Shown here: one piece after another, positions 1,730 to 62,040 of the stretch | Position numbering within the stretch: the stretch's first letter is position 1 | Layout: each line of letters opens with the position of its first letter | Origin: Malacoraja senta | Lineage: Eukaryota | Direction of reading: 5' to 3' | Length of the DNA stretch: 64,000 bases | Assembly: GCA_038087875.1 (NCBI GenBank) | Contig: CM075981.1 | Location: 65,968,001-66,032,000, forward strand | The notes under the pieces: model-generated | What the model was told of the DNA's origin: nothing | Database searches by the model: none | What the model saw: the letters and a program-made list of their open reading frames with translations, nothing else | Position numbers and translations under genes: made by a program

Positions 1730-2290
1730 CTACTGGATATCCAGTTGCTAACCTTTTTAACTCCCTTGCCCATTCCCACACTGACCTTTCTGTCCTGGGC
1801 TTCCTCCATTGCCAGAGTGAGGCCACATGCAAACTGGAGGGACAGCACTGCATATTCCACTTGGGCAGCTTACAACCCAACGATATTAACATTGAATTCT
1901 CCAGTTTTAGATTAACTAACGACCACCCTCCCCTTTTCTACCCGAAACACCCCTTCCTCTCCTCTTCCACCCCCCTTCCCTCCCTGGACTCCCACCTATT
2001 TCTACCCTCCACTACTTTCCTCCAGCTGGATTTACAATCCACAACTCTTCAAACCTGTCACACATTTTCTGTTCTTTTCTCTGGTTCTGTTCCAACCCCC
2101 CTTTGCCGAAGTGAAACTATTACCTGACGCGCTTTGTCCTGTCTCTCCGCTTTCCAGCTTTCTTTTCCTTCTTCTCCCTCACTACAATCAGCCTGAATAC
2201 GGGTCTTGAACCGAAATGTCGCTTATCCAGGTTCTTCAGACATGTTGCCTGAGTTACTCCTGCTGTGTTACTCCAGCAGTTTGTTTCCTT
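1730..2290 (+). mobile_element. Second, older PLE 3' fragment/pLTR in tandem
   Basis: Repeats the motifs of 1295-1720 (CTGTCCTGGGC..GAGTGAGGCCACATGCAAACTGGAGG..TTGGGCAGCTTACA); degenerate hammerhead motif at 2193-2220. Confidence 0.75.
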
Positions 2291-3091
2291 TTGTGACATT
2301 CTCTCACATTGCTGTTTGTTGAATTGTTCTGTGCCAACAATGATTGCGCTTCTAAATTAAAATAACAGATTAGAAAGCAATTTGGTCATTCTAAAGCCAT
2401 GAAAGGTAATGAGCAAAAACATTTACTTTCACCGCAAAATGAAATGAAGAAAATAAAATTCTGATGTCTGTAGTGGTTTAAATGCTGCAGGCACAGGATA
2501 TGGTTTGTTGCTGATGGTTTCAATCTGAAGTAGAAAGAAGTTTAATGTTAAAAATATCAGTGGAAAATCGCTTGAAAATTATGGTGTTGCAGTTCTCGAT
2601 TTCTGACGCCAAGAGGTGCTGCAGGATGGTCACAGCTCACTAACAGCCTGCACTGTCAGTGTTAAGCATGCTTTGTTAGTGTTCTCAGTGGGTAAGTATG
2701 CCACTGCATGGCTCACTGACGTTATCCATTTGGTAACAGGGTTTAGCACGATTTTTGTCTCATGACATACTGTATGTCACAGGTAGTCACTGTGTTCTTA
2801 GAATTACAGAGGGGAGTTCAGCATGTGCACGGAATCATAAAAACTGTAGAGCACATGAAGAATCTATTTGGCCCTCATATCTGTTGATCCCTTTTGGTAG
2901 TGTGTTTGTGGTTGTCATGCTGTCGTTTCTGGCTACAAGGCAAAAGCATACTTAAGGAGACTGTTTTGACACATTGTCACAGGACATAAGACGGATGTTT
3001 TTATGTTATGTGTGTTGAGTGAGTATGTTCCTCTGTTGTTGCTGGAAGCAAGAATTTCATTGTAAAGATTTTCATTGTACAAGATTTTCAT

Positions 3092-3412
3092 TGTACGAGA
3101 TAATTCACGAGTTCTCCCGAGTTTTCCCCTGATTCGAACTCGGAGAATGTCCTTAGCGGGTCCGTAGGAATTCATGGATGTCTCGTAGCGGCTTGTACGA
3201 GTAAAAAATAACAATTTTTTTACTCGTGGACATTTTTTGTGATGAAAAAACGTCACGAGTTTATCGGATTCCCCGAGTACCTACGTTAACATTACGAGCC
3301 ACTACGAGACATCCACGAACTCCTATGGACCCGCTACGGACATTCGCCGAGTTCGAATCAGGGGAAAACTCGGGAGAACTCTTGAATTACCTCGTACAGT
3401 GGGACAGGGGCT
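3092..3412. mobile_element. PIF/Harbinger-like MITE with left terminus lost
   Basis: Right end AGTGGGACAGGGGCT followed by TAA; long subterminal inverted repeats (TGTACGAG.TAATTCA.GAGTTCTCCCGAGTTTTCCCCTGATTCGAACTCGG vs its reverse complement at ~3346-3398); sits in an old Rex1-type 3' tail. Confidence 0.75.
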
Positions 3413-3476
3413 TAACTGTACCTCACCATTCTTGTGCATATGCAATTAACTCATCTTGACCTGCAGCACAACAGAA

Positions 3477-6400
3477 AATCTTCAAATATAGTATTTCTGA
3501 GCTCACCTGTATCAAAGAATCTGCAGAAATCAACGATGTAAGTAGCGAACTGCTAACGCATTTAAATGCATTAGCACTACTGCGCACTCCCGAAGATTGC
3601 GACTGTAAGGGAATCCCTGATCTCAGGGGAATCCCAGACCTCGCGGAGACTCGCAAGTACTGTACCTTTAAACACCGAGGAGGGCTTCATGGAGTACAGA
3701 AACGTGGCCGTCGGGCAGGACTACAAGTAAGACTGAAGCGTAGGGGACTTCGGCCCCCTCTCCCTACCATCCTACTGGCCAATGTGCAGTCACTAGAAAA
3801 CAAAGTGAAGGACTTAAGGTCAAGGCTGCTTTACCAAAGGGAGCTGAGGGAATGCTCTGTGTTCTGTTTCACAGAAACATGGCTCACCCCCAGCTCCCCA
3901 GGCTCAGCGGTCCAGCCTGAAGGGTTCTCCATCCACCGTATGGACCATACGCAGGCATCTGGGAAAGGGAGAAGAGGGGGCCTGCCTCATGGTCAACTCC
4001 TCGTGGTGCTCAGACGTGGCAGTCCTATTCCAACTCCTGCTCTCCACACCTCGAACATCTGGCGGTGAAGTGCCGTCCCTTCTACCTATCGAGGGAATTC
4101 TCCATCATCGTGACCGCAATCTACATCTCACCCCAGGCAGACGTCCTTCTGGCACTGGAGAAGCTGCATGCCGTGGTCAACAAGCACCGGACGGCTTACC
4201 CCGAGGCATTTACCACCGTAGCCGGGGACTTCAACCAAGCCAACCTGAAGAAATCGCTCCCTAACTTCCACCATGTCTCCTGCAGCACCAGAGGATCAAA
4301 CACCCTTGACCACTGCTACACGACCATCAAAGACGCCTATCGCTCTATCCCTCGCTCTCACTTCGGAAAATCCGACCATTCAGCAGTGCTGCTTCTTCCT
4401 GCATACAGGCAGCAACTGAAGAAAGCATCCCCAGAGGTGAGGACTGTACAGAGCTGGTTGGGGGAGGGGGGGGGGGGGGCAGAGGAACAATTCCAGGACT
4501 GCTTGGAGTCTGTAGACTGGGCAATATTCAGGGACTCGGCAAAAGACCTGAATGAATACGCCACAGTTGTTACAGACTTCATAAGTAAATGTGTGGAGGA
4601 CTGCGTTACAACAAAAACCTTCTGAGAGTTTCCTAACCAGAAGCCTTGGATGAACCATGAGATCCTCATTCTTCTGAGAGCAAGATCACGGACATTCAGG
4701 TCTGGCGATGCAGTGGTCTATAAGAAGTCCAGATACGACCTTGGTAAGGCCATCAAAAAGGCCAAAAGAGACTTTTGCTCTAAGCTGGAGGATGAGACAG
4801 ATGTTCGTCAACTGTGGCAGGGCTTGAATGCCATCAACTTCTACAAGGCAAAATCAGTAGGCGACTCAAATGACAGCGTAGCATTACTCCCTGACGAGCT
4901 CAATGCGTTCTATGCACGGTTCAATAGGGAGAACACTAATGTGCCTTCCCGAGCCGCTATTCGCCCTGACGGTGTTACAGTCATAGTCACAGAGGCCGAC
5001 GTCAGAAGATCCTTCAGGGAGGTGAACCCTCGGAATGCGCCTGGACCTGGTGGTATACCCAGCCGTGTTCTAAAAACCTGTGTGGACCAACTGGCTGGAG
5101 TTTTTACGGACATTTTCAACCTCTCACTTTAAGAGGGCATCAATAATACCGGTGCCCAAGAAGAGTAAGGTGAGGTGCCTCAATGATTATCGACCAGTGG
5201 CACTAACATCTGTGGTGATGAAGTGCTTTGAGAGGTTGGTTATGGTGCACATCAACTCCTACCTCTTCAAGAACCTCGACCAACTACAGTTCGCATACTG
5301 CCACAACAGGTCAATGGTAGATGCAATTCCACTGGCTCTCGACTCCGCACTGGACGACTTGGACAATAAAAACACCTACGTCAGGCTGTTGTTTATAGAC
5401 TACAGCTCGGCGTTTAATACCATCATCCCTTCCAAGCTGGTTACCAAGCTCACGGAACTGGGCCTCTGCGCATCCCTCTGCAATTGGATCCTCAACGTCC
5501 TCATCTACAGACCACAGTCTGTTCGAATTGGAGGAACCACTTCATCCTCAGTAACAATTAATACGGGAGCACCTCAAGGCTGCGTGCTCAGCCCCCTGCT
5601 TTACTCACTCTATACCCATGATGGCGTAGCCGGTCATAGTGCGAAGTCCATCATCAAGTTCGCCGATTACACCACTGTGGTTGGACGAATCACAGATGGG
5701 GACGAGTCAGAGATCGACCGACTGACCAAATGGTGCCAGCACAACAACCTGGCTCTCAACATCAGTAAGACCAAGGAACTGATTGTGGACTTTAGTAGGG
5801 GAAGGATGAGGACCCACAATCCTGTTTATATCAATGGGACGATCGTGGAGAGGGTCAATAACTTCAAATTCCTGGGCGTGCATATATCAGAAGATCTTTC
5901 CTGGACCCAGCACACTGATGCAATTGTAAAGAAGGCACATCAGCGACTCTACTTCCTGAGAAGATTACGGAAATTCGGCATGTCAAGGATTCTCCTAAAC
6001 TTCGACAGGTGCACGGTAAAGAGCATTCTGACTGGTTGCATCATGGCCTGATTCGGCAACTTGAACGTCCAGGAGCAAAAGAGACTACAAAAAGTTTTGA
6101 CCACTGCCCTGTCCATCACCGGCTTTAACCTCCCCACCTTCGAAGGGATTTATCGTAGTCGCTGCCTCAAAAAGGCAGCCAAAATCATCAAGGACCCACA
6201 CCATCCTGGCCATACACTTATCTCATCACTGCCATCAGGAAGAAGGTACAGGAGCCTGAAGACTGTAACGTCCAGGTTCAGGAACAGCTCTTCCCCACAG
6301 TCATCAGGCTATTAAACACAACGAATAAGCTATGAGCTCTGAACTGCAAAATACTATATTATTATTTGTTATTTGCACTATATTTGTTATTTATTGAACT

Positions 6401-13979: not shown

Positions 13980-14179
13980 NNNNNNNNNNNNNNNNNNNNN
14001 NNNNNNNNNNNNNNNNNNNNNNNNNNNNNNNNNNNNNNNNNNNNNNNNNNNNNNNNNNNNNNNNNNNNNNNNNNNNNNNNNNNNNNNNNNNNNNNNNNNN
14101 NNNNNNNNNNNNNNNNNNNNNNNNNNNNNNNNNNNNNNNNNNNNNNNNNNNNNNNNNNNNNNNNNNNNNNNNNNNNNNN
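13980..14179. other. Assembly gap (200 N)
   Basis: Run of exactly 200 N. Confidence 1.
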
Positions 14180-15560: not shown

Positions 15561-18500
15561 ACAATAGACAATAGGTGCATTTGGCCCTTCGAGCCAGCAC
15601 CGCCATTCAATGTGATCATGGCTGATCATCCCCAATCAGTACCCCATTCCTGCCTTCTCCCCATATCCCCTGACTCCGCTATTTTTAAGAGCCCTATCTA
15701 GCTCTCTCTTGAAAGCATCCAGAGAACCTGCCTCCACCGCCCTCTGAGGCATAGAATTCCACAGACTCACCACTCTCTGTGAGAAAAAGTGTTTCCTCGA
15801 CTCTGTTCTAAATGGCTTACTCCTTATTCTCAAAACTGTGGCCCCTGGTTCTGGACTCCCCCAACATCGGGAACATGTTTCCTGCCTCTAGTGTGTCCAA
15901 GCCCTTAACAATCTTATATGTTTCAATGAGATCCCCTCTCATCCTTCTAAACTCCAGAGTGTACAAGTCCAGCTGCTCCATTCTCTCAGCATATGACAGT
16001 CCCGTCATCCCGGGAATTAACCTTGTAAACCTACGTGCACTCCCTCAATAGTAAGAATGTCCTTCCTCAAATTAAGGGACCAAAACTGCACACAATACTC
16101 CAGGTGTGGTCTCACTAGGGCTCTGTACAACTGCAGAAGGACCTCTTTGCTCCTATATTCAATTCCTCTTGTTATAAAGGCCAACATGCCATTCGCTTTC
16201 TTCACTGCCTGCTGTACCTGCATGCTTACTTTCATAGACTAATGTACAAGGACCCCCAGATCACGTTGTACTTCCGCTTTTCCCAACTTGACGCCATTTA
16301 GATAGTAATCTGTCTTCCTGTTTTTGCTACCAAAGTGGATAACCTCACATTTATCCGCATTAAACTTCATCTGCTATGCATCTGCCCACTCCCCCAAACT
16401 GTCCAAGTCACCCTGCATTCTCATAGCATCCTCCGCACAGTTCACACTGACACCCAGCTTTGTGTCATCTGCAAATTTGCTAATATTACTTTGAATCCCT
16501 TCATCCAAATCATTGATGTATATTGTAAATAGCTGCGGTCCCAGCACCGAGCCTTGCGGTACCCCACTAGTCACTGCCTGCCATTCTGAAAGGGACCCGT
16601 TATTCCCTACTCTTTGTTTCCTGCTGCCAACCACTTCTCTATCCATGTCAGCACTCTACCCCCAATACCATGTGCCCTAATTTTGCCCACTAATCTTCTA
16701 TGTGGGACCTTACCAAATGCTTTCTGAAAGTCCAGGTACACTACATCCACTGGCTCTCCCTTGTCCATTATCCTAGTTACATCTTCAAAATATTCCAGAA
16801 GATTAGTGAAGCATGATTTCCCCTTCGTAAATCCATGCAGACTCGGACCAATCCTGTTACTTCTATCCAAATGTTCAGCTATCTCATCTTTATAATTGAC
16901 TCCAGCATCTTCCCCACCACCGATGTCAGGCTAACTGGTCTATAATTCCCTGTTTTCTCTCTCCCACCTTTCTTAAAAAGTGGGATAACATTAGCTACCC
17001 TCCAATCCACAGGAACTGATCCTGAGTCTATAGAACATTGCAAAATTATCACCAATGCATCCACGATTTCTGGAGCCACTTCCTTAAGTACCCTGGGAAG
17101 CAGACCATCAGGCCCAGGGGATTTATCAGCCTTCAGTCCCATCAGTCTATCCAACACAATTTCCTGCCCAATGTGGATTTCCTTCAGTTCCTCTGTCACC
17201 CCAGATCCTCTGGCCACTACTACATCAGGAAGATTGTTTGTGTCCTCCTTAGTGAAGACAGATCCAAAGTGCCTGTTCAATTCATCTGCCATTTCCTTGT
17301 TCCCCATAATAAATTCACCTTTTTCGGTCTTCAAGGGTCCAAACTTTGGTCTTAACTAATTTTTTCATCTTCACATACCTAAAGAAGCTTTTACTATCCT
17401 GCTTTATATACTTGGCTAGCTTACCTTTGTACCTCATCTATTCTCCCCGTATTGTCTTTTTGGTTATCTTCTGTTCTTTAAACATTACCCAATCCTCTTG
17501 CTTCCCGCTCATCTTTGCTACGTTGTACTTCTTCGCTTTAATTTTTATACTGCCCCTGATGTCCCTTGTCACCCATGGTCGTCCCTTTCGCCCCTTGGAA
17601 TCTTTCTTCCTCCTAGGAATGAACGGATCCTGCACCTGTATTATTCCTAGAAACACCTGCCATTTTTATTCCACTGTCATCCCTTCTAGTGTGTCTTTCC
17701 AGTCAACTTTGGCCAGCTCCTCCCTCATGGCCCCATAGTCCCCTTTATTCAACTGCAACACTGACAACTCCGATCTACTCTTCTCCCTCTCCAATTGTAG
17801 ATTAAACCTGACCATGTTGTCACTGCCTCCTAATGGCTCATTAACCTCGAGGTCCTTTATCAAATCCGGTTCATTACATAACACTAAATCCAGAATTGCC
17901 TTCTCCCTGGTCGGCTCCAATACAAGCTGTTCAAAGAATCCATCACGAAGGCACTCTACAAAGTCCCTTTCTTGGGGTCCAGTACCAACCTGATTTTCCC
18001 AGTCTACCTGCATGTTGAAATCTCCCATAACAACCACAGCATTACTTTTACTACATGCCAATTTAAACTCCTGATTCAACTTGCGCCCTATGTCCAGGCT
18101 ACTGTTTGGGGGCCTGTAGATTAGTCCCATTAAGGTATTTTTACCCTTACAATTCCTTAGTTCTATCCATACTGACTCCACATCTCCTGTTTCAATGTCA
18201 CCCCTTGCAAGGGACTGAATTTCATTCCTCACCAACAGGGCAACCGCACCACCTCTGCCCACCTGTCTGTCTTTTCGATAGGAGGTATACCCTTGAATAT
18301 TCAGTTCCCAGCCCTGGCCCTCTTGCAACCATGTCTCAGTAATTCCCACAACATCATACTTGCCAGTTTCTAACTGAGCCTCAAGCTCGTCCACTTTATT
18401 CCTTATACTTCGCGCATTCATACACAACACTTTGACCTCCGTATTCACTTCCCCCCTCGCAAATGGCCCTGACCTTACTCTGTTGTCCATTCTCAAGCTT

Positions 18501-18934
18501 TCCTTCCCATTAATTCGAGAATCTTTTGTAATTTTTCCTGCAGCCACTTCCCCTTCAACCATCCTTATACTCCCAATTTGTCAATCCCTCCCCCCCACTA
18601 TTTAGTTTAAACCCACACGTGTAGCCTTAGCAAACCTGCCTGCCAGAATGTCGGTCCCCCTCCAGTTAAGGTGTAACCCGTCCCTTTTGGACAGGTCACC
18701 CCTACCCCAGAAGAGATCCCAGTGGTCTATAAATCTAAATCCTTGCTCTCTGCACCAGCCCCTCAGCCACACATTCAGATCCCCTATCTCCCTGTTCCTG
18801 TCCTCACTAGCACGAGGTACTGGAAGCAATCCAGAGATAACCACCCTAGAAGTCCCGCATTTCAGTCTTCTTCCCAACTCTCTGAAGTCATGTTGGAGAA
18901 CCCCCTTCCACTTCTTCCCGATGTCGTTTGTACC
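15561..18934 (-). mobile_element. CR1 (HER1-like) LINE, 5'-truncated in ORF1, whole ORF2 span but frameshifted
   Basis: ORF1 SGNH esterase GTNDIG..VVISGLLP..DGLHLN (18602-18934); APE NARSIRNK, GITETW, YRPP, MGDFN (17666-18562); [33 protein letters not shown]; tail (CTATTGT)n. Confidence 0.93.
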
Positions 18935-21400: not shown

Positions 21401-22908
21401 TTTTCAACCTCTCACTTCTGAGGTTCCCACCTGTTTTAAAAGGGCATCAATTATACCAGTGCCCAAGAAGAGAAAGGTGATGTGCCTCAATGACTATCAA
21501 CCAGTGGCACTAACGTCGGTGGTGATGAAGTGCTTTTAGAGGTTGCTCATGGTGCAAATCAACTCCTACCTAGACAAAAACCTGGACCCACTGCAGTTCG
21601 CTTACGGCCACAACAGATCAACGGTGGATGCGATCTCACTGGCTCTCCATTCGCTCTGGACCACTTGGACAACAAAAACTCATATGTCAGGCTGTTATTC
21701 ATTGACTACAGCTCGGCATTTAACACAATCATCCCCTCCAAGCTGGTTACCAAACTCTCAGAACTGGGTCTCTGCGCATCCCTCTGCAATTGGATCCTCG
21801 ACTTCCTCATTCACAGACCAGTCTGTCCGTATTGGTGGAAATGTGTCAGCCTCGATAACAATCAGCACAGGAGCACCTCAAGGCTGCGTGCTCGGCTGTA
21901 CTCACTCTATACTCATGACTTAGTAGCCGGCCATAGTGCGAACTCCATCGTCAAGTTCGCTGATGACACCACTGCTGTGGGACATATCACTGATGGAGAT
22001 GAGTCAGAGTATAGAAGTGAGATCGACCGTTTGACCAAATGATGCCAGCACAATAACCTGGCTCTCAACACCAGCAAAACCAAGGAACTGATTGTGGACT
22101 TTGGAAGGTGTAGGATGGGAACCCATAGTCCCGTTTATATCAACGGGTCAATGGTGGAGAGGGTCAAGAGCTTCAAATTCCTGGGCGTGCACATCTCTGA
22201 AGATCTCTCCTGGTCCGAGAACACGGATGCAATTATAAAGAAAGCACATCAGCGCCTCTACTGCCTGACAAGATTACGGAGAGTCGGTATGTCAAGGAGG
22301 ACTCTCTCGAACTTCTACAGGTGCACAGTAGACAGCATTCTGACCCCCGTGGCTTGGTTCGTCAACTTGAGCGCCCAGGAGCGGAAAAGACATAAAGTTG
22401 TAAACACTGCCCAGTCCATCATCGGCTCTGACCTCCCTACCATCGAGGGGACCTACCGCAGTCGCTGCCTCAAAAAGGCTGCCAGCATCATCAAGGACCC
22501 ACACCATCCTGGCCACTCACTCATCTCCCCGCTGCCCTCAGGTAGAAGGTACAGGAGCCTGAAATCTGCAACATCCAGATTCAGGAATAGCTGCTTCCCC
22601 ACAGCCATCAGGCTATTAAACTCAACTCAATCAAAACTCTGAACATTAATATCTCATTGCACTTTATCTGCTTATTTATTTATGTGTGTATAACCATATA
22701 ACCATATAACCATTACAGCACGGAAACAGGCCATCTCGGCCCTTCAAGTCCGTGCCGAACATTATTATTATTATGTGTATATATATATTCAATGGTATAT
22801 GGACACATTGATCTGTATTTATGCCTACTATATTCTGTTGTGCTGAAGCAAAGCAAGAATTTCATTGTCCTATCTGGGCACATGACAATAAACTATCTTG
22901 AATCTTGA
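21401..22908 (+). mobile_element. Rex1/Babar LINE, 5'-truncated (RT plus 3' tail)
   Basis: [35 protein letters not shown]; tail ATGACAATAAACTATCTTGAATCTTGA; 6-bp TSD ATGTAA at 21395-21400 and 22909-22914. Confidence 0.9.
22691..22763 (-). mobile_element. Ultra-short (~73 bp) CR1 3'-end insertion within the Rex1 tail
   Basis: TAACCATATAACCATATAACCATTACAGCACGGAAACAGGCCATCTCGGCCCTTCAAGTCCGTGCCGAACATT is identical to the CR1 3' end at ~46151-46223. Confidence 0.85.
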
Positions 22909-28532: not shown

Positions 28533-30980
28533 TAGAAACATAGAAACATAGAAATTAGGTGCAGGAGTAGGCCATTCGGCCCTTCGAGCCTGCACCGCCA
28601 TTCAATATGATCATGGCTGATCATCCAACTCAGTATCCCGTACCTGCCTTCTCTCCATACCCTCTGATCCCTTTAGCCACAAGGGCCACATCTAACTCCC
28701 TCTTAAATATAGCCAATGAACTGGCCTCGACTACCCTCTGTGGCAGATAGTTCCAAAGATTCACCACTCTCTGTGTGAAAAAAGTTCTTCTCATCTCGGT
28801 TTTAAAGGATTTCCCCCTTATCCTTAAGCTGTGACCCCTTGTCCTGGACTTCCCCAACATCGGCAGCAATCTTCCTGCATCTAGCCTGTCCAACCTCTTA
28901 AGAATTTTGTAAGTTTCTATGATCCCCTCTCAATCTCCTAAATTCTAGAGAGTATAAACCAAGTCTATCCAGTCTTTCTTCATAAGACAGTCCTGACATC
29001 TCAGGAATCAGTCTGGTGAACCTTCTCTGCACCCCCTCTATGGCAATAATGTCCTTCCTCAGATTTGGAGACCAAAACTGTACGCAATACTCCAGGTGTG
29101 GTCTCACCAAGACCCTGTACAACTGCAGTAGAACCTCCCTGCTCCTATACTCAAATCCTTTTGCTATGAAAGCTAACATACCATTGGCTTTCTTCACTGC
29201 CTGCTGCACCTGCATGCCTACTTTCAATGACTGGTGTACCATGACACCCAGGTCTCGCTGCATCTCCCCATTTCCTAATCGGCCACCATTTAGATAATAG
29301 TCTGCTTTCCTGTTTTTGCCACCAAAGTGGATAACCTCACATTTATCCACATTATACTGCATCTGCCAAACATTTGCCCACTCACCCAGCCTATCCAAGT
29401 CACCTTGCAGTCTCCTAGCATCCTCCTCACAGCTAACACTGCCCCCCAGCTTAGTGTCATCCGCAAACTTGGAGATATTGCCTTCAATTCCCTCATCCAG
29501 ATCATTAATATATATTGTAAATAGCTGGGGTCCCAGCACTGACCCTTGCGGTACCCCACTAGTCACTGCCTGCCATTGTGAAAAGGACCCGTTTACTCCT
29601 ACTCTTTGCTTCCTGTTTGCCAGCCAGTTCTCTATCCACATCAATACTGAACCCCCAATGCCATGTGCTTTAAGTTTGTATACTAATCTTTTATGTGGGA
29701 CCTTGTCGAAAGCCTTCTGGAAGTCCAGATACACCACATCCACTGGTTCTCCCCTATCCACGCTACTAGTTACATCCTCGAAAAATTCTATAAGATTCGT
29801 CAGACATGATTTACCTTTCGTAAACCCATGCTGACTTTGTCCAATGATTTCACTACTTTCCAAATGTGCTGCTATCCCATCTTTAATAACTGACTCTAGC
29901 AGTTTCCCCACTACCGATGTTAGACTAACTGGTCTGTAATTCCCCGTTTTCTCTCTCCCTCCCTTCTTAAAAAGTGGGGTTACGTTTGCTACCCGCCAAT
30001 CCTCAGGAACTACTCCAGAATCTAAAGAGTTTTGAAAGATTATTACTAATGCATCCACTATTTCTGGAGCTACTTCCTTAAGTACTCTGGGATGCAGCCT
30101 ATCTGGCCCTGGGGATTTATCGGCCTTTAATCCATTCAATTTACCCAACACCACTTCTCGACTAACCTGGATTTCACTCAATTCCTCCAACTCCTTTGAC
30201 CCGCGGTCCCCTGCTATTTCCGGCAGATTATTTATGTCTTCGTTAGTGAGGACGGAACCAAAGTAGTTATTCAATTGGTCCGCCATACCCTTGTTCCCCA
30301 TGATCAACTCACCTGTTTCTGACTGCAAGGGACCTACATTTGTTTTAACTAATCTCTTTCTTTTCAGATATCTATAAAAACTTTTGCAGTCAGTTTTTAT
30401 GTTCCCTGCCAGTTTTCTTTCATAATCTATTTTTCCTTTCCTAATTAAGCCCTTTGTCCTCCTCTGTTGGTCTCTGAATTTCTCCCAGTCCTCCGGTATG
30501 CTGCTTTTTCTGGCTAATTTGTACGCATCATCCTTCGCTTTGATACCATCCCTGATTTCCCTTGTTTGTAGTTCATCCATGCAGTCTTTAAATGTCTTCC
30601 ATTGCATATCCACCGTCAACCCTTTTAGAATTAATTGCCAGTCAATCTTGGCCAATTCACATCTCATACCCTCAAAGTTACCTTTCTTTAAGTTCAGAAC
30701 CATTGTTTCTGAATTAACAATGTCACTCTCCATCCTAATGAAGAACTCAACCATATTATGGTCACTCTTGCCCAAGGGGGCACGTACAACAAGACTGCTA
30801 ACTAACCCTTCCTCATTACTCAATACCCAGTCTAAAGTAGCCTGCTCTCTCGTTGGTTCCTCTACATGTTGATTTAGATAACTATCCCGCATACATTCCA
30901 AGAAATCCTCTTCCTCAGCACCCCTGCCAATTTGATTCACCCAATCTATATGTAGATTGAAGTCACCCATTATAACTGTT
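28533..30980 (-). mobile_element. Young CR1 LINE, 5'-truncated within APE, long open RT frame
   Basis: ORF 28898-31132 from IMGDFN through [30 protein letters not shown] and KFADDTK to RGD; tail (TTTCTATG)n. Confidence 0.93.
28898..30980 (-). pseudogene. CR1 ORF2 remnant (partial APE plus intact RT motifs; in-frame internal deletion; C-terminal frameshift)
   Basis: 744-aa ORF whose first ~50 aa are flanking DNA; linker deletion at DCMDELQ|TREIRDG (~30566); frameshift near 28920. Confidence 0.85.
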
Positions 30981-43845: not shown

Positions 43846-44386
43846 AGGGGCTGTCCCACTTGGGCGACCTAATTGGCGAGTTTAGAAGAGTTTGAAAAAA
43901 TGACATGTTGAAGACCTCCTTCGACTATGTAGAAGACCTCCTTCGACCTCCTTTGACTATGTTGAAGACCAGCTTCGACTAGCTATGACTAACTTCGGGA
44001 AAATTGGACACCGAATAGTGGAGAGTGAAGACGACCTCCTTCGACCTCCCTTCGACTATGATGAAGACTATCTACGACTACCTTCGACTACCCTCGATTA
44101 CCTACGACTAACATGCCGACCTACTACGACCTACTATGACTAAACCTACGAGTAAAAAAAGTATCGATTTTTTCCATGGCGACATTTTTTTACTCGCGGG
44201 CATTTTTTAACATATTGAAAAAACGCCGCGACCTAGCTGAGGCCTCGAGTACGCGGAGACCACTCTCGAGCATGAAGGAGAGTTGCGAAGACCTCCTACG
44301 ACCTCGTGTCGACCATGCTGCGAGTATGAATCGAGGGCAAACTCGCCAGAACTCGCGGATTAGGTCACCCAAGTGGGACAGGCCCT
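43846..44386. mobile_element. PIF/Harbinger-like MITE (541 bp)
   Basis: TIRs AGGGGCTGTCCCACTTGGG / CCCAAGTGGGACAGGCCCT; flanks TTA/TAA; internal CTTCGAC/CTACGAC array; paralog at 55308-55851. Confidence 0.88.
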
Positions 44387-46143
44387 TAAGGTACAGTGAT
44401 ATGCGAATTAGCCTGAGACCCTGCATCAGGACTGTGATGCAATTGAAAAGATTGCCGTTATATAACAATATGGAAGCAGGTGGGATAGAAGCTGATAGAT
44501 AATAGGTGGAACCAGAGGGAGAGGATGATGGGCAGATTGAGGCTACATCGGCCTCTCACCATTCCTCTCCTCCACTTAGTTCCATGTACCCACTATCCAC
44601 TCCTCATCTCATTTCATCTGTGAAGTACCAGGCACTGTCCCATCCTTTTCCCATCTGGTTTCATTTGTGCATCATCCCTCCCCACCAGTGTCTATCTAGC
44701 ATCTATAGCCTCTATTCCTTCCCCCCCAAATTTTACTATAAATTGAAAACCTTTCTTGTCTTCTCTCAGTCCCGATTCAGGATCTCAACCCGAAACATTA
44801 ACTTGCACCTTTTGACTCCACGGCCACTGCTTGACTCGCTCAGTTTTTCCAATATTCTGTTTTTGTTCCAGATTCCAGCAACTGCATTCGCTTTGGTTAT
44901 GTCAGTCTGACTATTGACCTAGCTATCACAATTCACCAAGCCCTGTCCTGTGAAAGAATGATTAACTTTGATGGATGGACTCTAGAACAGATTTCACAAT
45001 GTGTCTTTGTAATTGACTGTTGAAAGCAGTCTGAAATGTGCAGAATGATGCTTTATAGTCCTAAGTCTCCATGTTCTTGGTTACAGCATATTTGAACAGT
45101 GTTCCTGTGAAAGTCCACAAGACATTCTGAAGATCCAGTTCGGTCTTTATTGTCATTGTATATTTTATTATCTATTATTAAATCGTTGAAAACATTAGCG
45201 ACGCAGTGGTGCTGGTTTACTATCCATTAAAGATAGCAAGGATAAAGGAGCCTTTAAAAATGTCTGTTATTGGTTGTTACCAAAAGCAGTTTAAATGTTT
45301 GAAACTATGTGATATGTTTTCAAATCGAAATAGGAACTGTCTTACAGGTCTATAAAATAATGAAAAGATTGACAGATTGGTGCAGAGAAGAATATCTCCT
45401 TGGCCCCAGGAGTGTTCAAAACTAGGAACTATAAATATATGATTGTTATTAATAAATGTAATAAGGAATTCAGCATAAACTTATCGGTCTTGGGATTGGT
45501 TAGAAACAACGAGCCAATTTTTAGTGCTGGGTAACTAAAGACTCTGTGATCCTACCAACCATTCCCTTAGTGTTCTGATGCACCCTCCATTTCATGCATA
45601 AATCATGCAGTTTCTGAGAAGTGGAAAGTCTGGATTTTAAAAAATGCCAATTCAGGAGGAAAGATGATCTGTAATATTCCTCCTTGCCCTTTTTGCGGCA
45701 ATAACAGGTAAAGGAGATGATTTTATCTCTGACTAACATTATATGCTGCCTGCTTATCCAATATGGTAATCTTTGCCCCAGTCATGTCTGTTTCACAAAC
45801 AAAATAATTCAGCCAGGCAGCTTCTATTGTGCATGCTGGCAAACTGTTTCAGATACTCAATCGGTAAAGAATCACCTTCTGGTATCCAATTTAGAACGGG
45901 CCACTCACAACTTTAGTTTCAGGTCATACAGCATGGAAACTAGCCCTCTAGCCCAACTTGTCCACGCCAACCAGAATGCCCATCTACCCATAGCTGGCCC
46001 ATATTCTCCTAAACCTTTCCTGTCATGTACCTGTCCAAATGTCTTTCCTGTGGTTTTATTTTGAGATTAACCATCCTTTAAAATATATACAATACAGAAA
46101 TAAGCTATGGAGCTTATTGTTCAGTTTAATTTACTTTAGAGAT

Positions 46144-48158
46144 AACCATATAACCATATAACCATATAACCATTACAGCACGGAAACAGGCCATCTCGGC
46201 CCTTCAAGTCCGTGCCGAACATTAAAAAAAAATTTAAAAATAAATACTTCCCCCTAGTCCCATCTACCTGCACTCAGACCATAACCCTCCATTCCTTTCC
46301 CGTCCATATACCCATCCAATCTATTTTTAAAGGATAAAATCGAACCAGCCTGCACCACTTCCACTGGAAGCTCATTCCACACAGCTACCACTCTCTGAGT
46401 AAAGAAGTTCCCCCTAATGTTACCCCTAAACTTCTGTCCCTTAATTCTCAAGTCATGTCCCCTTGTTTGAATCTTCCCTACTCTCAATGGAAAAAGCTTA
46501 TCCACGTCAACTCTGTCTAACCCGCTCATAATTTTAAAGACCTCTATCAAGTCCCCTCTTAACCTTCTGCGCTCCAAAGAATAAAGACCTAACTTGTTCA
46601 ACCTTTCTCTGTAACTAAGTTGCTGAAACCCAGGCAACATTCTAGTAAATCTCCTCTGTACTCCTTCTATTTTGTTGACATCCTTCCTATAATTAGGCGA
46701 CCAAAATTGTACTCCATACTCCAGAATTGGCCTCACCAATGCCTTGTACAATTTTAACATTACATCCCAACTTCTATATTCAATGCTCTGATTTATAAAG
46801 GCCAGCACCCCAAAAGCTTTCTTTACCACCCTATCTACATGAGATTCCACCTTCAGGGAACTATGCACAGTTATTCCTAGATCCCTCTGTTCAACTGCAT
46901 TCCTCAATTCTCTACCATTTACCATGTACGTCCTATTTTGATTCGTCCTGCCGAGATGTAGTACCTCACATTTATCAGCATTAAACTCCATCTGCCATCT
47001 TTCAGCCCACTCTTCCAAATGGCCTAAATCTCTCTGTAGACTTTGAAAATCTACTTCATTATCCACCACACCACCTATCTTAGTATCATCTGCATACTAA
47101 TCCAATTTTCCACACCATCATCCAGATCATTGATGTAAATGACAAACAACAGTGGACCCAACACAGACCCCTGAGGCACCCCACTAGTCACCGGCCTCCA
47201 ACCTGACAAACAGCCATCCACCATTACTCTCTGGCATCTCCCATTCAGCCACTGTTGAATCCATCTTGCTACTCCACCATTAATACCCAACAATTGAATC
47301 TTCTTAACCAACCTTCCATGAGGAACCTTGTCAAAGGCCTTACTGAAGTCCATATAGACAACATCCACTGCTTTACCCTCATCAATTTCCCTAGTAACGT
47401 CTTCGAAAAATTCTAGAAGATTAGTCAAACATGACCTTCCAGGCACAAATCCATGTTGACTGTTCCTAATCAGACCCTGCTTATCCAGATGCTTATATAT
47501 ATTATCTTTAAGTATCCTTTCCATTAATTTGCCCACCACTGACGTCAAACTAACAGGTCTATAATTGCTAGGTTTACTCTTAGAACCCTTTTTAAACAAC
47601 GGAACAACATGTGCAGTACGCCAATCCTCCGGCACTATTGCCGTTTCTAATGACATTTGAAATATTTCTGTCATAGCCCCTGCTATTTCTACACTAACTT
47701 CCCTCAATGTCCTCAGGAATATCCTGTCAGGACCTGGAGACTTATCCGTTTTCATCCTTTTCAAAAGTGTCCGCACCTCCTCTTCTTTGAATCTCATAGT
47801 TTCCATTGCTACTCTGCTTGTTTCCCTTACCTCACATAATTCCATATCCTTCTCCTTGGTGAATACCGAAGAAAAGAAATTGTTCAGTATCTCCCCCATC
47901 TCTTTTGGCTCTGCAGATAGCTGTCCACTCTGACTCTCTAATGGACCAATTTTATTCCTTGTTATCCTTTTGCTATTAATATAGCTGTAGAAACCCTTTG
48001 GATTTACTTTCACCTTACTTGCCAAAGCAACCTCATATCTTCTTTTAGCTTTTCTAATTTATTTCTTAATATTCTTTTTACATTCTTTATACTCCTCAAG
48101 CACCTCATTTACTCCATGCTGCCTATAATTATTGTAGATCTCTCTCTTTTTCCGAACC
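46144..48158 (-). mobile_element. CR1 LINE, non-inverted 3' part (linker, RT, 3' UTR, (TATGGTTA)n tail)
   Basis: ORFs 47075-48025 ([30 protein letters not shown]) and 46254-47069 (C-terminus). Confidence 0.93.
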
Positions 48159-49832
48159 GCATGTACTCCTGTTTGAGTACTGTTGCGGGGGACAGCCTTT
48201 CTGGGGGTAGCGACAGAGGCCGGGCCTCCGGCTCAGAGACCGGCCCTATTACTCAGAAGGGTAGGGAAAAGAAGAGAAGGGCAATAGTAATAGGGGACTC
48301 TATGGTTAGGGGGTCGGATAGGCGATTCTGTGGACGCAGTCAGGAGACCCGGATGGTAGTGTGCCTCCCAGGGTCAGGGATGTGTCTGAACGTGTCCAAG
48401 AGATCCTGAAATTGGAGGGAGAGGAGCCTGAGGTTGTGGTACATATAGGTACCAATGACATAGGCAGAAAAAGAGAAGAGGTCCTGAAAGGAGAATTTAG
48501 GGAGTTGGGAGGAGAGTTAAGGAGAACGTCCGCAAAGGTAATAATCTCAGGATTACTACCTGTGCCACGCGACAGTGAGAGCAGGAACGAAATGAGGTGG
48601 AGGATAAATGCGTGGCTGAGGAACTGGTGCAGCGAGCAGGGATTCAAATTTCTGGATCATTGGGACCTCTTTTGGGGAAGGTGTGACCTGTACAGAAAGG
48701 ACGGGTTGCACTTGAACCCGAGGGGAACCAATATCCTGGCGGGGAGATTTGCAAAGGCTACTGGGCAGACTTTAAACTAGAACGGTTGGGGGGGGGGACT
48801 CAAATAGAGAAAGATGGTAGAAAATGTAGGAGGCAGGAGGCAGAGAAGGGAAGCACTCTGACCCAAAATGTAGGGGAGAAAGAAGAAAAAGATAATAAAC
48901 AGAGAATAAGTGGTGGTGGGTTTCTTAAATGTGTATATTTTAATGCTAGGAGCATTGTAAGAAAGGTGGATGAGCTTAGAGTCTGGATTGACACCTGGAA
49001 GTATGATGTTGTGGCGATCAGTGAAACATGGTTGCAGGAGGGCTGTGATTGGAAACTAAATATTCCAGGATTTTGTTGCTTCAGGGGTGATAGAATTGGA
49101 GGGGCAAGAGGTGGGGGTGTTGCATTGCTTGTCAAGGAAGATATTACAGCAGTGCTTTGGCAGGATAGATTAGAGGGCTCGTCTAGGGAGGCTATTTGGG
49201 TGGAGCTGAGAAATGGGAAAGGTGTAGCAACACTTATAGGGGTGTATTATAGACCGCCAAATGGGGAGCGAGAATTGGAAGAGCAAATATGTAAGGAGAT
49301 AGCAGATATTAGTAGTAAGCACAAGGTAGTGATTGTGGGAGATTTCAGTTTTCCACACATAGACTGGGAAACACATTCTGTAAAAGGGCTGGATGGTTTG
49401 GAGTTTGTAAAATGTGTGCAGGATAGTTTTTTGCAGCAATACATAGAGGTACCTACTAGAGAAGGGGCAGTGCTGGACCTCCTGTTAGCAAATGAGACCG
49501 GGCAGGTGGCGGAGGTAAGCGTTGGGGAGCACTTCGGGTCCAGTGATCACAATACCATTAGTTTCAATATAATTATGGAGAGGGTCAGAACTGGACCTAG
49601 GGTTGAGATTTTTAATTGGAGAAAGGCTAACTTTGAGGAGATGCGAAAGGATTTAAAAGGAGTGAATTGGGACATGTTGTTTTATGGGAAGGATGTAGAA
49701 GAGAAATGGAGGACATTTAAAGGTGAAATTTTAAGAGTACAGAATCTTTATGTACCTGTTCGGTTGAAAGGAAATAGTAAAAATTGGAAAGAGCCATGGT
49801 TTTCAAGGGAAATTGGACATTTGGTTCGGAAA
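48159..49832 (+). mobile_element. Inverted 5' part of the same CR1 (ORF1 esterase plus ORF2 APE)
   Basis: AIVIGDSMVR, HIGTNDIG, DGLHLN (ORF1); FNARSI, AISETW, YYRPP, VGDF, SDH..EPWFSREIGHLVRK (APE); ends in GGTTCGGAAA, the 10-mer that also begins the minus-strand part. Confidence 0.9.
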
Positions 49833-49949
49833 CAGCATGGAAACAAGCCCTTTGGACAACCAAGTCCACGCTGACCATCAATCACTTGTTCACACTAGTG
49901 TTATGTCGCCCACTTTCTCATCCACTCCCTACGCACTGACAAGACGGAG

Positions 49950-50880
49950 TAGAGGAGGAAATAAAAAACTAGTGACATGGTGTTAGGACAATAACCTCTC
50001 CCTCAATGTCAGCAAGATGAAGGAGCTAGTTATGACCTTCAGGAAGCATGACCCAATTAGCATCAATGGTGTGGAACTGTTTGAGAGCTTAATGTTCCTT
50101 GCCATTAATATTACCAATGATGTGTCATAGACCAGCCACAATGATGCGACTGCCAAGAAGGCACATCAACGCGCTACTTCCTGAGGAGATCGAGGAACTT
50201 CAGCATGTCTTCAGTGACTCTTACAAACTTTTACTGATGATCCATGGAAAGCATACTGTCAAGTTGCTTCAGAAGTAGCTTTCCATGGATCATCTGTTCA
50301 GGAATAGGTCTGCCCAAGACTGCAAGAAATTACTGAGAGTTGTAGGTGTAGCTCAGTCCATTACTCCGACCAGCCTTACCACCAATGACTACATCTATAC
50401 TACAGTCCTTCCATAAGCTAGGGTACTGTTCAATTCACCTCTGTCCCAATGAGGACATTGGAATGTGTCCAAGGAACTAATCTGCTACAATGCTGAGAAT
50501 TATATTCTGCACTCCGTATCTTTCCCTTTATTCTATCCATTGTACTTGAGTTTGAACTAATCGTATCTAGGAAGAGTATATCTGATCTGTGTAGAAAGAA
50601 ACTGCAGATGCTGGTTTATACTGAAGAAAGGCACAAAGTGCTGGAGTAACTCAGCGAGCAATATCTCTGGAAGAAAAGGATGGGTCGGTTTGGGTAGGTT
50701 GAGTCTGAAGAAGGGTTCTGACCCGAAGCATCACCCATCCTTTTTCTCCCGTGATGCTCCCTGACCCACTGAGTTACTCCAGCACTTTGTGTACATCTGA
50801 TTGATTTGGATAGCACACAAAACAAAGCTTTTCACTATACCTCGGTACATGTGACAATAATAAACATAAATTTAAACCTA
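49950..50880 (+). mobile_element. Old Rex1/Babar 3' fragment and tail
   Basis: DNNLSLNVSKMKEL and KKAHQR-like motifs; tail CTCGGTACATGTGACAATAATAAAC. Confidence 0.65.
50587..50794. mobile_element. Older fold-back PLE pLTR insertion
   Basis: 23-bp perfect IR CACAAAGTGCTGGAGTAACTCAG (50632-50654 / 50769-50791); degenerate hammerhead at 50705-50732; candidate TSD ATCTGAT. Confidence 0.75.
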
Positions 50881-51889
50881 ACTCAGGTAGGCAACCTGTC
50901 GGCATGGATGAGTTGGCCTGTTTCCTTGCTATATAACTCTGACTCTAAGGTTACTTTGCACCTCTACATCATCAATTATCCTGCTGTTTATTGCATACTA
51001 CTTTGTCTTGTTCCATGTCGCACATACATTACTTTGCACTTATCGGGATTAAATTCTATTTGCCTCTGATCTACCCATCTGACCAGGCCACCTCCACCTT
51101 CCTGTGGTTTCGGGCATTCCTTCTCACTGACAACCCTGCTGCCATTTTTTATCTGAAACGTTTTAATCATCTTTCTTAATGTAAATCTAAATCATTAATG
51201 TTTATTTTTGAAAGCGAGAATGAAAATTGTGGCTTAGCTGATGTCCTTCTTTATCCACACCGCCTGTAAGTGTTGGCACTGTTTGAGGAAGAGAAAATCA
51301 CTTAAAGATTCTGGATATTAGAGTACCTAATGTCTAACTTTAGAATTTAAACTGTCAAAACAGAAATAAAATAATATATTAAACTCTTCATTGCTGTTTA
51401 TTTAATTTTTATAAATCATTTGGTTGGCTAATTCCTAAACGTAATAGAGCATTAATGATAATAGATACTGTCCAAGGAAGATAAGTGATTCTATTTGTAA
51501 ATATCTTCGTCACAGTTTTCTGATATCGCAATCTATCATCCCATCGAATTCTGGCAGGTGCCGTGGTAAGCTGATATGCAGAACTGCTGCGTGGTTCATA
51601 TACACTGGATCAGCCAAGTGATTGGATGGCCCGAGTGATGCACAGGGGTTGTTAGAATTACTGTCCTTGCCAGTGTCCAGCAATTTATCACAGAAATACT
51701 CCTAAAGCCAAGTACTGGGTGATGAACAGGCAATAGGCTTCACTATTTTCTTTTCACACGTAAACAAAAATGATTTTCTTACTGCAGTGTTAACAAATTT
51801 TAAGTCGCTACAAAATCACATTTGCATGTCCATTGAAGGTCTGGCCACTTGGTGCACCTTGAATCTGGAGCTTTCATAAAGTAGTTCCA

Positions 51890-52286
51890 GGGTTGAAAAT
51901 GACCTGGAGCGGGGCCTTACATCGCCCGGCGCGGCTTTAAATGGCCGCGGGACTTGCTAGCGCCCGCCGGGGGCTCCAACATCAAGACCCGGAGCGTGGC
52001 CTTGCATCGCCCGGCGCGGCTTTAATGGCCGCGGGACTTATTTACCATCGCCCACCGGGGGCTTTGACTCTGACATCGGGAGGAGAATGGGGAGTGCAGG
52101 GGAGAGATAAGAGTTTGCCTTCCATCACAGCGAGGAGGAGATTCGCTGTGATGGATGTTTGTGTAAATTGTGTTGTGTCTTGGTTCTTCTACTTGTTTGT
52201 ATGACTGCAGAAACCAAATTTTGTTTGAACCTCAATGAGGTTCAAATGACAACAAATAAATTGTATCATTGTATTGTATCATTGTA
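51890..52286 (+). mobile_element. GC-rich non-autonomous retroelement (SINE-like) with Rex1-type 3' tail
   Basis: Two ~85-bp tandem units (51901, 51986), hairpins CCATCACAGCGA..TCGCTGTGATGG and TTTGAACCTC-AAT-GAGGTTCAAA, then ATGACAA..AATAAA and (ATTGT)-type repeats. Confidence 0.6.
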
Positions 52287-61339: not shown

Positions 61340-62040
61340 AGGGTATAATTCCAGATATCCCTTAAAGTGGCAGCATGGTTATATTGGGAGGTGAAGAAGG
61401 CAATATAAGATGCTTGCTTTCCTCAGTCTTGGCAGAGAATACAAGGGTTACGACATCATGTTACAACTTTATGAAACATTGGTTTGGCCCCACCTGGAAT
61501 CTTGTTTATAATTCTTGTCACACTTTAGGAAGGATGCGATTATGCTGGAAAGAGTGGATTTTAGTTTAGTTTAGAGATACAGCATGAAAATAAGCCCTTC
61601 TGCCCACCAAGTCCACGCTGACCAGTGATCACCCATACACCATTTCTATCCTACACAGAGGAGATTCACCAGGATGTTGCCTGGTTTAGAACATTTCAGT
61701 TATGAGGAATTGTATAGGTCACATTTTTTTTCCCGATACCGAGGAGGCTGAAGGGGGAACCTTGATAAAGGTATACAAAATTAGGAGAGAATACATAAGA
61801 AGAATCTTTTCCTCACGGTGTGGTTGTGTAAAAGAAAAAGGTAGAGGTTTAAAGTGAGAGATACGAGGTTTAATGGGGGTCAGGTATTTTTCATTCTGAG
61901 TGTGGTTGGAATCTGGAACACGCTGCTTGAAGAGGGGGTGGAAGCAGGTACTCTTGAAACATTTGAGAAGCAGCTAGACAAGCACTTGAATCACCAAGGC
62001 ATAGAGGGCTACAGACTCAATGTGGGTAAATGGGACATAC
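61340..62040 (+). mobile_element. Old CR1 3' region with a nested SINE tail (61560-61655, minus)
   Basis: GATTCACCAGGATGTTGCCTGG and VVGIWNTL motifs; TTAGTTTAGTTTAGAGATACAGCATG tail. Confidence 0.6.

What the first reader, a model, noticed from the sequence alone, without database searches (positions are those of the whole stretch)
46144..49832. CR1 LINE with a twin-priming-type 5' inversion
Seen: the two oppositely oriented CR1 pieces are consecutive parts of one element. The + piece (ORF1 esterase, APE) ends in GGTTCGGAAA (49823-49832). The - piece starts with the same 10-mer (reverse complement at 48149-48158) and carries on through RT to the tail. The outer ends rejoin into one SINE tail, TTTAGAGAT|ACAGCATGGAAACAAGCCC (compare the uninterrupted copy at ~61570), with essentially no TSD, and a few filler bases lie at the inner junction. 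Established: this geometry (internal point X at the outer junction, 5'-most point joined back to X) is the signature of twin priming, described mainly for mammalian L1. Inference: a CR1-clade element in a chondrichthyan used twin priming or an equivalent co-insertional inversion.
Basis: partly seen in the sequence, partly recalled or inferred. Interest (0 to 1): 0.7.

Follow-up and report, generated by a model that had tools for sequence, protein, structure and literature searches.

The report
CR1-like LINE inserted with inverted 5' half
One young CR1-type jumping gene in this ray- or skate-like genome went in with its front half flipped, the scar that "twin priming" leaves on mammalian L1 elements, which is a modest surprise because lab work on the related L2-clade element ZfL2-1 saw no such flips.

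Summary
Window 46144-48158 (- strand) is the RT-to-tail part of a young CR1-like LINE. Window 48159-49832 (+ strand) is the ORF1-esterase and endonuclease part just upstream of it.

Canonical copies of the same family, two contiguous relatives (L001, L002) and three ray proteins all read straight through GGTTCGGAAA. The two pieces are therefore consecutive and share exactly 10 nt. The outer flanks rejoin into one retroposon tail, (GTTTA)n-GAGAT|ACAGCATGG, with 0-1 nt of target duplication or loss. Both halves carry the same lineage-specific letters and are each under 1% from the family majority.

The best reading is one co-insertional 5' inversion of the twin-priming type (confidence about 0.7). 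It differs from L1 cases in three ways: no target-site duplication, at most 1 nt of microhomology at the outer junction, and a microsatellite tail instead of poly(A).

Not tested: read support across the three junctions (only unitigs of about 110-150 nt were available), an empty allele, and genome-wide frequency.

The scan's first readers noted one other CR1 case and five L1/Tx1 cases on other pieces of this genome. All are unchecked.

This is a new member of a known kind, of moderate interest.

The parts
46095..46143 (-). Left flank: tail of the older target retroposon (degenerate GTTTA-type repeats ending in GAGAT). Its last base, T46143, is the base that precedes ACAGC in intact copies.
   Evidence: Matches the tail of the uninterrupted copy at 61560-61578.
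46144..46173 (-). LINE 3' microsatellite tail, 3.75 units of ATATGGTT on the sense (-) strand. The AT at 46142-46143 could belong to the target or to the tail (2-nt microhomology).
   Evidence: family D2. The same tail with one unit fewer is seen in the tail-only copy at 22689-22764.
46174..46253 (-). LINE 3' UTR. It holds the ~47-nt terminal motif shared with other CR1-type elements and SINE-like copies, including the target itself.
   Evidence: Alignment A1. Positions 46149-46224 are 100% identical to 22689-22764.
46144..48158 (-). 3' piece of the LINE (2,015 nt), from element point X to the tail. It holds the RT domain and C-terminal part of ORF2. It has one in-frame TAA (48059-48061) and a small deletion/frameshift near 47095.
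   Evidence: Pfam RVT_1; maps to L001 nt 1851-3626; P0002 residues 369-538; lesions seen.
48149..48158 (-). Copy 1 of the duplicated 10-mer GGTTCGGAAA. This is the 5' end of the 3' piece (point X).
48159..48162 (.). Inner (inversion) junction. GCAT is 0-4 nt of filler or unresolved microhomology.
   Evidence: A family unitig aligns only from 48163 (record 21). Codon-level homology to L001 ORF1 starts at about 48161-48164.
48163..49832 (+). Inverted 5' piece of the LINE (about 1,670 nt), from point Z inside ORF1 to point Y.
   Evidence: Maps to L001 nt ~197-1860; P0002 residues 20-371.
48163..48780 (+). ORF1, truncated at its N-terminal side, with a GDSL/SGNH esterase domain. There is one frameshift near 48370-48373. 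The stop is at 48778-48780.
   Evidence: Pfam Lipase_GDSL_2; tblastn with L001 ORF1 hits in two frames.
48786..49832 (+). ORF2 N-terminal part (349 codons, open): apurinic-type endonuclease plus the linker up to ...HLVRK.
   Evidence: Pfam Exo_endo_phos; ray homologues at 66-77% identity.
49823..49832 (+). Copy 2 of the 10-mer, at the outer (5') junction (point Y). A49832 could equally be the first base of the target's ACAGC (1-nt microhomology).
49833..49930 (-). Right flank: body of the same older, 5'-truncated target retroposon 3' end.
   Evidence: 82% identical to 61576-61632; alignment A1.

Best explanation
A single retrotransposition of a CR1-like LINE RNA (ORF1 esterase, endonuclease-RT ORF2, ATATGGTT-repeat tail) into the tail of an older retroposon produced a 5'-inverted copy by twin priming.

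Inferred steps:
1. The window's + strand was nicked after ...GAGAT (46143). Its 3'-OH primed cDNA 1 on the RNA's terminal repeats. cDNA 1 ran 2,015 nt, to point X (the first G of GGTTCGGAAA).
2. The opposite strand was cut directly across, giving a blunt break. Its 3' end ...CCATGCTG(T) started cDNA 2 inside the same RNA at point Y, in the A-run that ends the 10-mer. cDNA 2 ran about 1,670 nt back to point Z inside ORF1.
3. cDNA 1 displaced the first 10 nt of cDNA 2 before stopping, so the 10-mer was copied twice.
4. The two cDNA 3' ends were joined with 0-4 extra bases, and the gaps were filled.

Shown: the anatomy. The pieces are consecutive, they overlap by 10 nt, their orientations are opposite, there is a single reconstructable target, and both halves match in subfamily and low divergence.

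Inferred: that the second cDNA was primed by the top-strand end, and the order of the steps.
For: - Contiguity and the exact 10-nt overlap: read joints and loose ends in four runs; DNA relatives L001 and L002; three read-through proteins.
- An independently placed fragment would end within 10 nt of X only about 0.4-0.6% of the time.
- The flanks rejoin to GAGAT|ACAGCATGG exactly as in the intact copy at 61560-61597 and in the motif alignment. So the inverted block contains no flank.
- Both halves carry organism-E majority letters where organisms A and B differ: 46416, 47405, 47843, 47956 in one half and 49086, 49115, 49135, 49676 in the other.
- Visible private differences are 3.0-4.5 per kb versus 5.4-9.0 per kb, not significantly different.
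- Identities to outgroup proteins are equal on both sides: 74.3/75.3, 69.7/67.4 and 61.5/56.4 %.
- There is no second half of the element elsewhere in the window and no inverted duplication of flank.
- Small duplications, deletions or insertions at the inversion junction are typical of L1 5' inversions (PMC5668948).
Against: - There is no TSD, and at most 1 nt of microhomology at the outer junction. L1 5' inversions have 10-20-nt TSDs (PMC4245944) and the highest microhomology frequency at the 5' junction among L1 insertion classes (PMC2912911).
- The L2-clade element ZfL2-1 gave no 5' inversion in HeLa or DT40 cells. Its short overhang was argued to be too short to prime (PMC4245944).
- The junctions are not confirmed by locus-spanning reads.
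- No empty allele was seen.
- This is a single case.
Confidence: 0.7

Rival explanations
1. A co-insertional inversion by another route. The second segment was not primed by the top-strand end. For example, the RT jumped templates, or end-joining repair captured a second cDNA made in the same RNP at the 5' junction.
For: The break is blunt and the outer junction has at most 1 nt of homology. The possible 4-nt filler at the inner junction looks more like end-joining or template-jump products than annealing-driven twin priming. PMC4245944 argues that short overhangs cannot prime.
Against: [quoted passage not shown] The start of the inverted piece coincides with the end of the other piece to within 10 nt. 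Both are direct predictions of top-strand priming on the same RNA. Random capture would give an arbitrary end point.
Confidence: 0.12
2. An assembly artefact: the inversion does not exist in the animal.
For: The family is extremely abundant. No locus-specific contig bridging any junction was shown.
Against: Repeat-driven misjoins occur inside shared sequence. Here both internal joins lie where the two sides share no homology: X against Z with GCAT between them, and Y against the target. The flanks also rejoin to the base. The nearest gap (N run 13980-14179) is more than 30 kb away.
Confidence: 0.06
3. A later chromosomal inversion of the 5' part of an ordinary - oriented insertion, by staggered breaks that duplicated 10 nt.
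For: Staggered-break inversions can leave inverted duplications at their ends (own knowledge). The arrangement A-d | B'-d' | C is formally compatible.
Against: One breakpoint would have to fall exactly, to within 1 nt, on the element/target boundary, because no flank is inverted and the target rejoins perfectly. There is no inverted flank repeat.
Confidence: 0.04
4. A daughter of an already inverted master copy that was transcribed and retrotransposed as a unit.
For: Any RNA ending in the family's 3' motif and tail could be mobilised.
Against: The daughter's 5' end would have to coincide exactly with the master's outer junction (Y = X+9). The inner-junction 24-mer was not found elsewhere, but only JGI metagenome contigs could be scanned, which is a weak test.
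Confidence: 0.03
5. Two unrelated fragments that lie side by side by chance.
For: The window holds about 14 CR1-type fragments.
Against: A + piece without a 3' tail cannot arise by ordinary TPRT. The end points coincide to 10 nt (chance about 0.5%). The subfamily letters are the same. The target rejoins as a single site.
Confidence: 0.02

Closest known systems
Twin-priming 5' inversions of mammalian L1 (Ostertag and Kazazian 2001, as cited in PMC5668948, PMC2912911 and PMC4245944)
   Same: The 3' piece carries the tail and the adjoining upstream piece is inverted. An internal point lies at the outer junction. There is a small duplication at the inversion point and a few extra bases or microhomology at the inner junction. 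The inverted piece is 5'-truncated.
   Different: The LINE is CR1-like, not L1. The tail is a microsatellite, not poly(A). The target has 0-1 nt of duplication instead of 10-20 nt. Microhomology at the outer junction is at most 1 nt. The host is a cartilaginous fish.
De novo inserts of zebrafish ZfL2-1 (CR1-1_DR, L2 clade) in HeLa-RC and DT40 cells (PMC4245944)
   Same: A related LINE superclade with ORF1 and ORF2 and with short or no TSDs. Extra nucleotides at 5' junctions are reported for the related element ZfL2-2 (PMC4245944).
   Different: No 5' inversion was seen among those inserts. Here a natural insert has one.
Single 5'-inverted Nimb-2_DR insert in DT40 cells (PMC4245944)
   Same: A rare 5' inversion of a non-L1 LINE in a non-mammalian setting.
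   Different: A different clade. That family has TSDs of about 12 bp. It was an experimental insert.
Elasmobranch HE1 SINE / HER1 LINE pair sharing 3' ends (recalled from memory, Ogiwara et al. 1999; not checked here)
   Same: The young LINE and the SINE-like target share a ~47-nt 3' motif followed by family-specific short repeats.
   Different: Identity with HE1/HER1 was not tested. No reference sequences were available.

Membership tests
Twin-priming-type 5'-inverted LINE insertion | Two segments of one element in opposite orientation, with the 3' segment carrying the element's tail. | tested here: met
Twin-priming-type 5'-inverted LINE insertion | The inverted segment is the part immediately upstream of the 3' segment, with only a small deletion or duplication at the break. 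| tested here: met
   A 10-nt duplication, seen in read joints, in L001 and L002 coordinates and in the proteins.
Twin-priming-type 5'-inverted LINE insertion | The whole structure occupies one target site, so the pre-insertion sequence can be reconstructed. | tested here: met
   The flanks rejoin as in the paralogous intact copy at 61560-61597. No true empty allele was seen.
Twin-priming-type 5'-inverted LINE insertion | A target-site duplication flanks the whole insertion (10-20 nt in L1). | tested here: not met
   0-1 nt. Short or absent TSDs are, however, usual for CR1 and L2 clades (PMC4245944, citing Ichiyanagi and Okada 2008).
Twin-priming-type 5'-inverted LINE insertion | Microhomology at the outer 5' junction and at the inversion junction. 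| tested here: inconclusive
   Outer junction: 1 nt (A49832). Inner junction: 0-4 nt of filler or unresolved microhomology, because the family's own sequence upstream of Z is unknown.
Twin-priming-type 5'-inverted LINE insertion | Both halves are of the same subfamily and age. | tested here: met
   Shared lineage-specific letters. Private differences are not significantly different. Identities to outgroups are equal. The list of differences was truncated, so this is approximate.
Twin-priming-type 5'-inverted LINE insertion | The junctions are present in single DNA molecules of the organism. | not tested
CR1-clade LINE (broad sense, CR1/L2 group) | ORF2 with an N-terminal apurinic-type endonuclease and an RT domain. 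| tested here: met
   Pfam PF03372/PF14529 and PF00078.
CR1-clade LINE (broad sense, CR1/L2 group) | ORF1 with an esterase (GDSL/SGNH) domain, as in many CR1 and L2 elements (own knowledge). | tested here: met
   PF13472, E = 2e-14.
CR1-clade LINE (broad sense, CR1/L2 group) | No poly(A). The 3' end is a conserved motif followed by a few short tandem repeats. | tested here: met
   ATATGGTT x 3.75 after a motif shared by six copies.
CR1-clade LINE (broad sense, CR1/L2 group) | The RT groups with CR1 proper rather than L2, Rex1 or others in a phylogeny. | not tested
   No reference RT set was available. The hits are unnamed ray proteins.

The most novel reading that the evidence does not exclude
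The RT of a CR1-clade LINE can start a second cDNA from a blunt, virtually homology-free top-strand end. If so, 5' inversion is not restricted to L1 with 10-20-nt overhangs as the cell-culture work suggested. Together with the unchecked notes of L1 and CR1 inversions elsewhere in this genome, this would make cartilaginous fishes a natural system in which the host permits twin priming for several LINE clades.
Probability: 0.45. Interest if true: 0.5.

Novelty: new member of a known kind. Interest (0 to 1): 0.4.

Why it matters
5' inversion is treated as a hallmark of L1 in mammalian cells. The one systematic comparison I could read found none for an L2-clade element and explained this by its short target overhang (PMC4245944).

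A clean natural example in a CR1-like element with a blunt target argues that a long overhang is not strictly needed. It also gives a concrete signature (X/Y coupling, 10-nt duplication, no TSD) to count genome-wide.

If such copies are common in rays and skates, this bears on how the second half of LINE integration works outside mammals. It also bears on repeat annotation, because inverted halves are otherwise scored as two separate insertions. As a single locus it changes little by itself.

Tried and rejected
- Reads: one run search and one lay were allowed. They settled contiguity and subfamily but gave only short unitigs, so junction support and an empty site stayed open.
- Fetching the Hypanus sabinus locus of P0002 failed because the file was too large. 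The ENA scaffolds L001 and L002 served instead.
- Scans of JGI metagenome contigs for the inner-junction 24-mer and for the ORF1 context of point Z found nothing (one search got no answer). This is uninformative.
- Rfam found nothing in 44000-52000.
- Papers: Ostertag and Kazazian 2001, Ichiyanagi et al. 2007 and Ichiyanagi and Okada 2008 are not held. So I could not check whether genomic CR1 or L2 5' inversions were tabulated there.
- Two searches were too unspecific to help.
- No held paper couples twin priming with CR1 or L2 inversions.
- Rejected: a template-switch scar with duplicated flank, because there is no inverted flank repeat.
- Rejected: homologous recombination between the LINE's 3' motif and the target's, because both motif copies are complete.
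- Rejected: the second half of a + oriented element lying nearby, because there is none in the window.
The pieces were always searched separately.
Full report
**What is there**

Window 46144-49832 holds two oppositely oriented pieces of one young LINE.

- The - strand piece (46144-48158) carries an RVT_1 reverse-transcriptase domain and the rest of ORF2. It also has a 3' UTR and a tail of 3.75 ATATGGTT units.
- The + strand piece (48159-49832) carries an N-terminally truncated ORF1 with a GDSL esterase domain. It also has the first 349 codons of ORF2 with an Exo_endo_phos endonuclease.
- The nearest database proteins are unnamed predicted proteins of rays (Hypanus sabinus, Narcine bancroftii, Mobula hypostoma) at 66-77% identity. 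This fits a cartilaginous-fish genome.

**Are the pieces consecutive?**

Yes, by four independent lines.

1. Reads. I laid Logan contigs of four runs from three differently labelled organisms on 45700-50200. The family is enormously repeated. Other copies produce 'opposite strands' joints 48148<->49832 (10 letters fit both sides) and 48157<->49823 (9 letters). The loose ends behind 49832 read AAGAGAGAGATCTACAATA, the reverse complement of 48130-48148. Those behind 48158 read the reverse complement of the letters before 49823. So ordinary copies run straight through GGTTCGGAAA.
2. DNA relatives. L001 and L002 are contiguous scaffolds from ENA metagenomes, about 74% identical. The + piece projects to end at L001 nt 1860 and the - piece to start at nt 1851. 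In L002 the figures are 1271 and 1262.
3. Proteins. P0002, P0005 and P0008 align up to the last base of the + piece and continue from base 2 of the - piece, sharing three residues.
4. Reading frame. It is continuous...HLVRK then VRKKREIY....

The 10-mer itself is not statistically special, since nine inverted 10-mers are shared by chance. Its position at both piece ends, and its mapping to one element coordinate, is what counts. An independently placed fragment would end within 10 nt of that point in about 0.5% of cases.

**Same family and age?**

- Both halves carry the letters that predominate in organism E (the best holder of the stretch) where organisms A and B have another letter. These are 46416, 47405, 47843 and 47956 in one half, and 49086, 49115, 49135 and 49676 in the other.
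- Among the differences shown, letters private to this copy number 6-9 in 2,015 nt and 9-15 in 1,674 nt. The difference is not significant (p = 0.10-0.30). The list was truncated, so this is approximate.
- Identities to outgroup proteins are equal on the two sides: 74.3/75.3, 69.7/67.4 and 61.5/56.4 %.
- Each half has light damage. The - piece has one TAA (48059-48061) and a small deletion near 47095. The + piece has one frameshift near 48370.

**Target site**

- The left flank ends ...GTTTAATTTACTTTAGAGAT. The right flank begins ACAGCATGGAAACAAGCCC.
- An intact copy at 61560-61597 reads ...GTTTAGTTTAGAGAT-ACAGCATGAAAATAAGCCC.
- A six-copy alignment shows T-ACAGC as the start of a shared ~47-nt retroposon 3' motif.
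- The target therefore gained or lost 0-1 nt.
- AT at 46142-46143 and A at 49832 are ambiguous between the element and the target, giving 2-nt and 1-nt microhomologies.
- No flank sequence is inverted or duplicated.

**Inner junction**

- After ...TTTCCGAACC come GCAT and then ORF1 codons that align with L001 ORF1 from about residue 66-68.
- A family unitig aligns only from 48163. So 0-4 nt are filler or unresolved microhomology.
- The inverted piece starts inside ORF1, at least about 200 nt from the element's 5' end. It is therefore also 5'-truncated.

**Mechanism**

The polarity of the strands is what twin priming predicts.

- On the window's + strand, antisense cDNA from tail to X is attached to the left flank's 3' end.
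- On the - strand, antisense cDNA from Y to Z is attached to the right flank's 3' end.
- The two cDNA 3' ends meet at the inner junction.
- The 10-nt overlap is explained if cDNA 1 displaced the first 10 nt of cDNA 2.
- Small duplications, deletions or insertions at L1 inversion junctions are well known (PMC5668948).

I rate this at 0.70.

Rivals:

- Other co-insertional routes, such as a template jump or capture of a second cDNA by end joining, get 0.12. The blunt break and near-absent homology look more like end joining. However, they do not predict the X/Y coupling.
- A later inversion (0.04) needs a breakpoint exactly on the element/target boundary.
- Misassembly (0.06) is unlikely because neither internal join lies in shared sequence. 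But no bridging read was seen.
- An inverted master copy gets 0.03.
- Chance adjacency gets 0.02.

**Comparison with the literature**

- In the held library, all the twin-priming papers listed by my searches (the top 40 of 106) concern mammalian L1 or engineered R2. None describes CR1 or L2 5' inversions.
- Yamaguchi et al. 2014 (PMC4245944) found 5' inversions only with human L1 in human cells, plus one Nimb-2_DR insert in DT40. They found none with ZfL2-1 (CR1-1_DR). They argued that a ~5-nt overhang is too short to prime, and that L1 inversions go with 10-20-nt TSDs.
- Kojima 2010 (PMC2912911) found that microhomology is most frequent at the 5' junction of inverted L1.
- The present copy has the L1-type geometry but lacks both the TSD and the microhomology.
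- I could not read Ichiyanagi and Okada 2008, which may tabulate genomic CR1 and L2 junctions. The novelty claim is therefore limited to 'not found in what I could search'.

**Other scan notes**

First readers flagged one more CR1 with twin-priming geometry (s1-206974) and five L1/Tx1 cases on other pieces of this genome. All are unchecked, and I could not read those sequences. In this window, only this one of about 14 CR1-type fragments flips orientation with abutting coordinates.

- Read laying was given 4,501 letters.
- The N run at 13980-14179 was left alone.

**Verdict**

This is a new member of a known kind, of moderate interest, pending read support and a genome-wide count.

Noticed in passing
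window 22689-22764: A tail-only copy (76 nt) of the same LINE family, 100% identical to 46149-46224, with one tail repeat fewer and no obvious TSD. It suggests very recent activity and extreme 5' truncation.
   Followed up: partly
window 48771-48780 and 48786 onward: ORF1 ends with the slippery heptamer T_TTA_AAC right before its TAG stop. ORF2 is open in the -1 frame.
   Followed up: partly
window 46143/46144 and 49832/49833, compared with 46173/46174: The LINE landed exactly between the target retroposon's short-repeat tail and its conserved 3' motif (GAGAT|ACAGC). In the LINE's own 3' end, this is the point where its motif meets its repeats (AACCATT|ACAGC). The two motifs are homologous. 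This may be coincidence, or it may hint that the RNP is guided to related 3' ends. Only a genome-wide count could tell.
   Followed up: no
window 46222-46250: An A-rich ~29-nt stretch in the 3' UTR replaces about 10-15 different letters found in most family copies (loose ends at 46221 and 46251 in all four runs). The tail-only copy at 22689 shares its first letters, so this may mark a sub-lineage.
   Followed up: no
Read laying on window 45700-50200: The same LINE family, at 90-100% likeness, is hugely abundant in runs labelled as at least three organisms (A, B, E), with lineage-specific majority letters. The unique left flank 45700-45850 is also covered in all four runs.
   Followed up: partly
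protein P0001 (Hypanus sabinus): This predicted protein has a direct tandem duplication of roughly 100 residues (MRRDLERVDW...KAKRRYE). It spans the same endonuclease-RT linker in which the inversion point lies here.
   Followed up: no
window 15762-18934 (-) and 28756-30979 (-): Older CR1-type copies, 40-70% identical at protein level to L001. They are colinear from ORF1 or the endonuclease to the RT. They are ordinary uninverted copies that serve as in-window controls.
   Followed up: partly
window 50632-50654 / 50769-50791: A perfect 23-nt inverted repeat with 114 nt between the arms, just right of the locus. Its nature is unknown.
   Followed up: no
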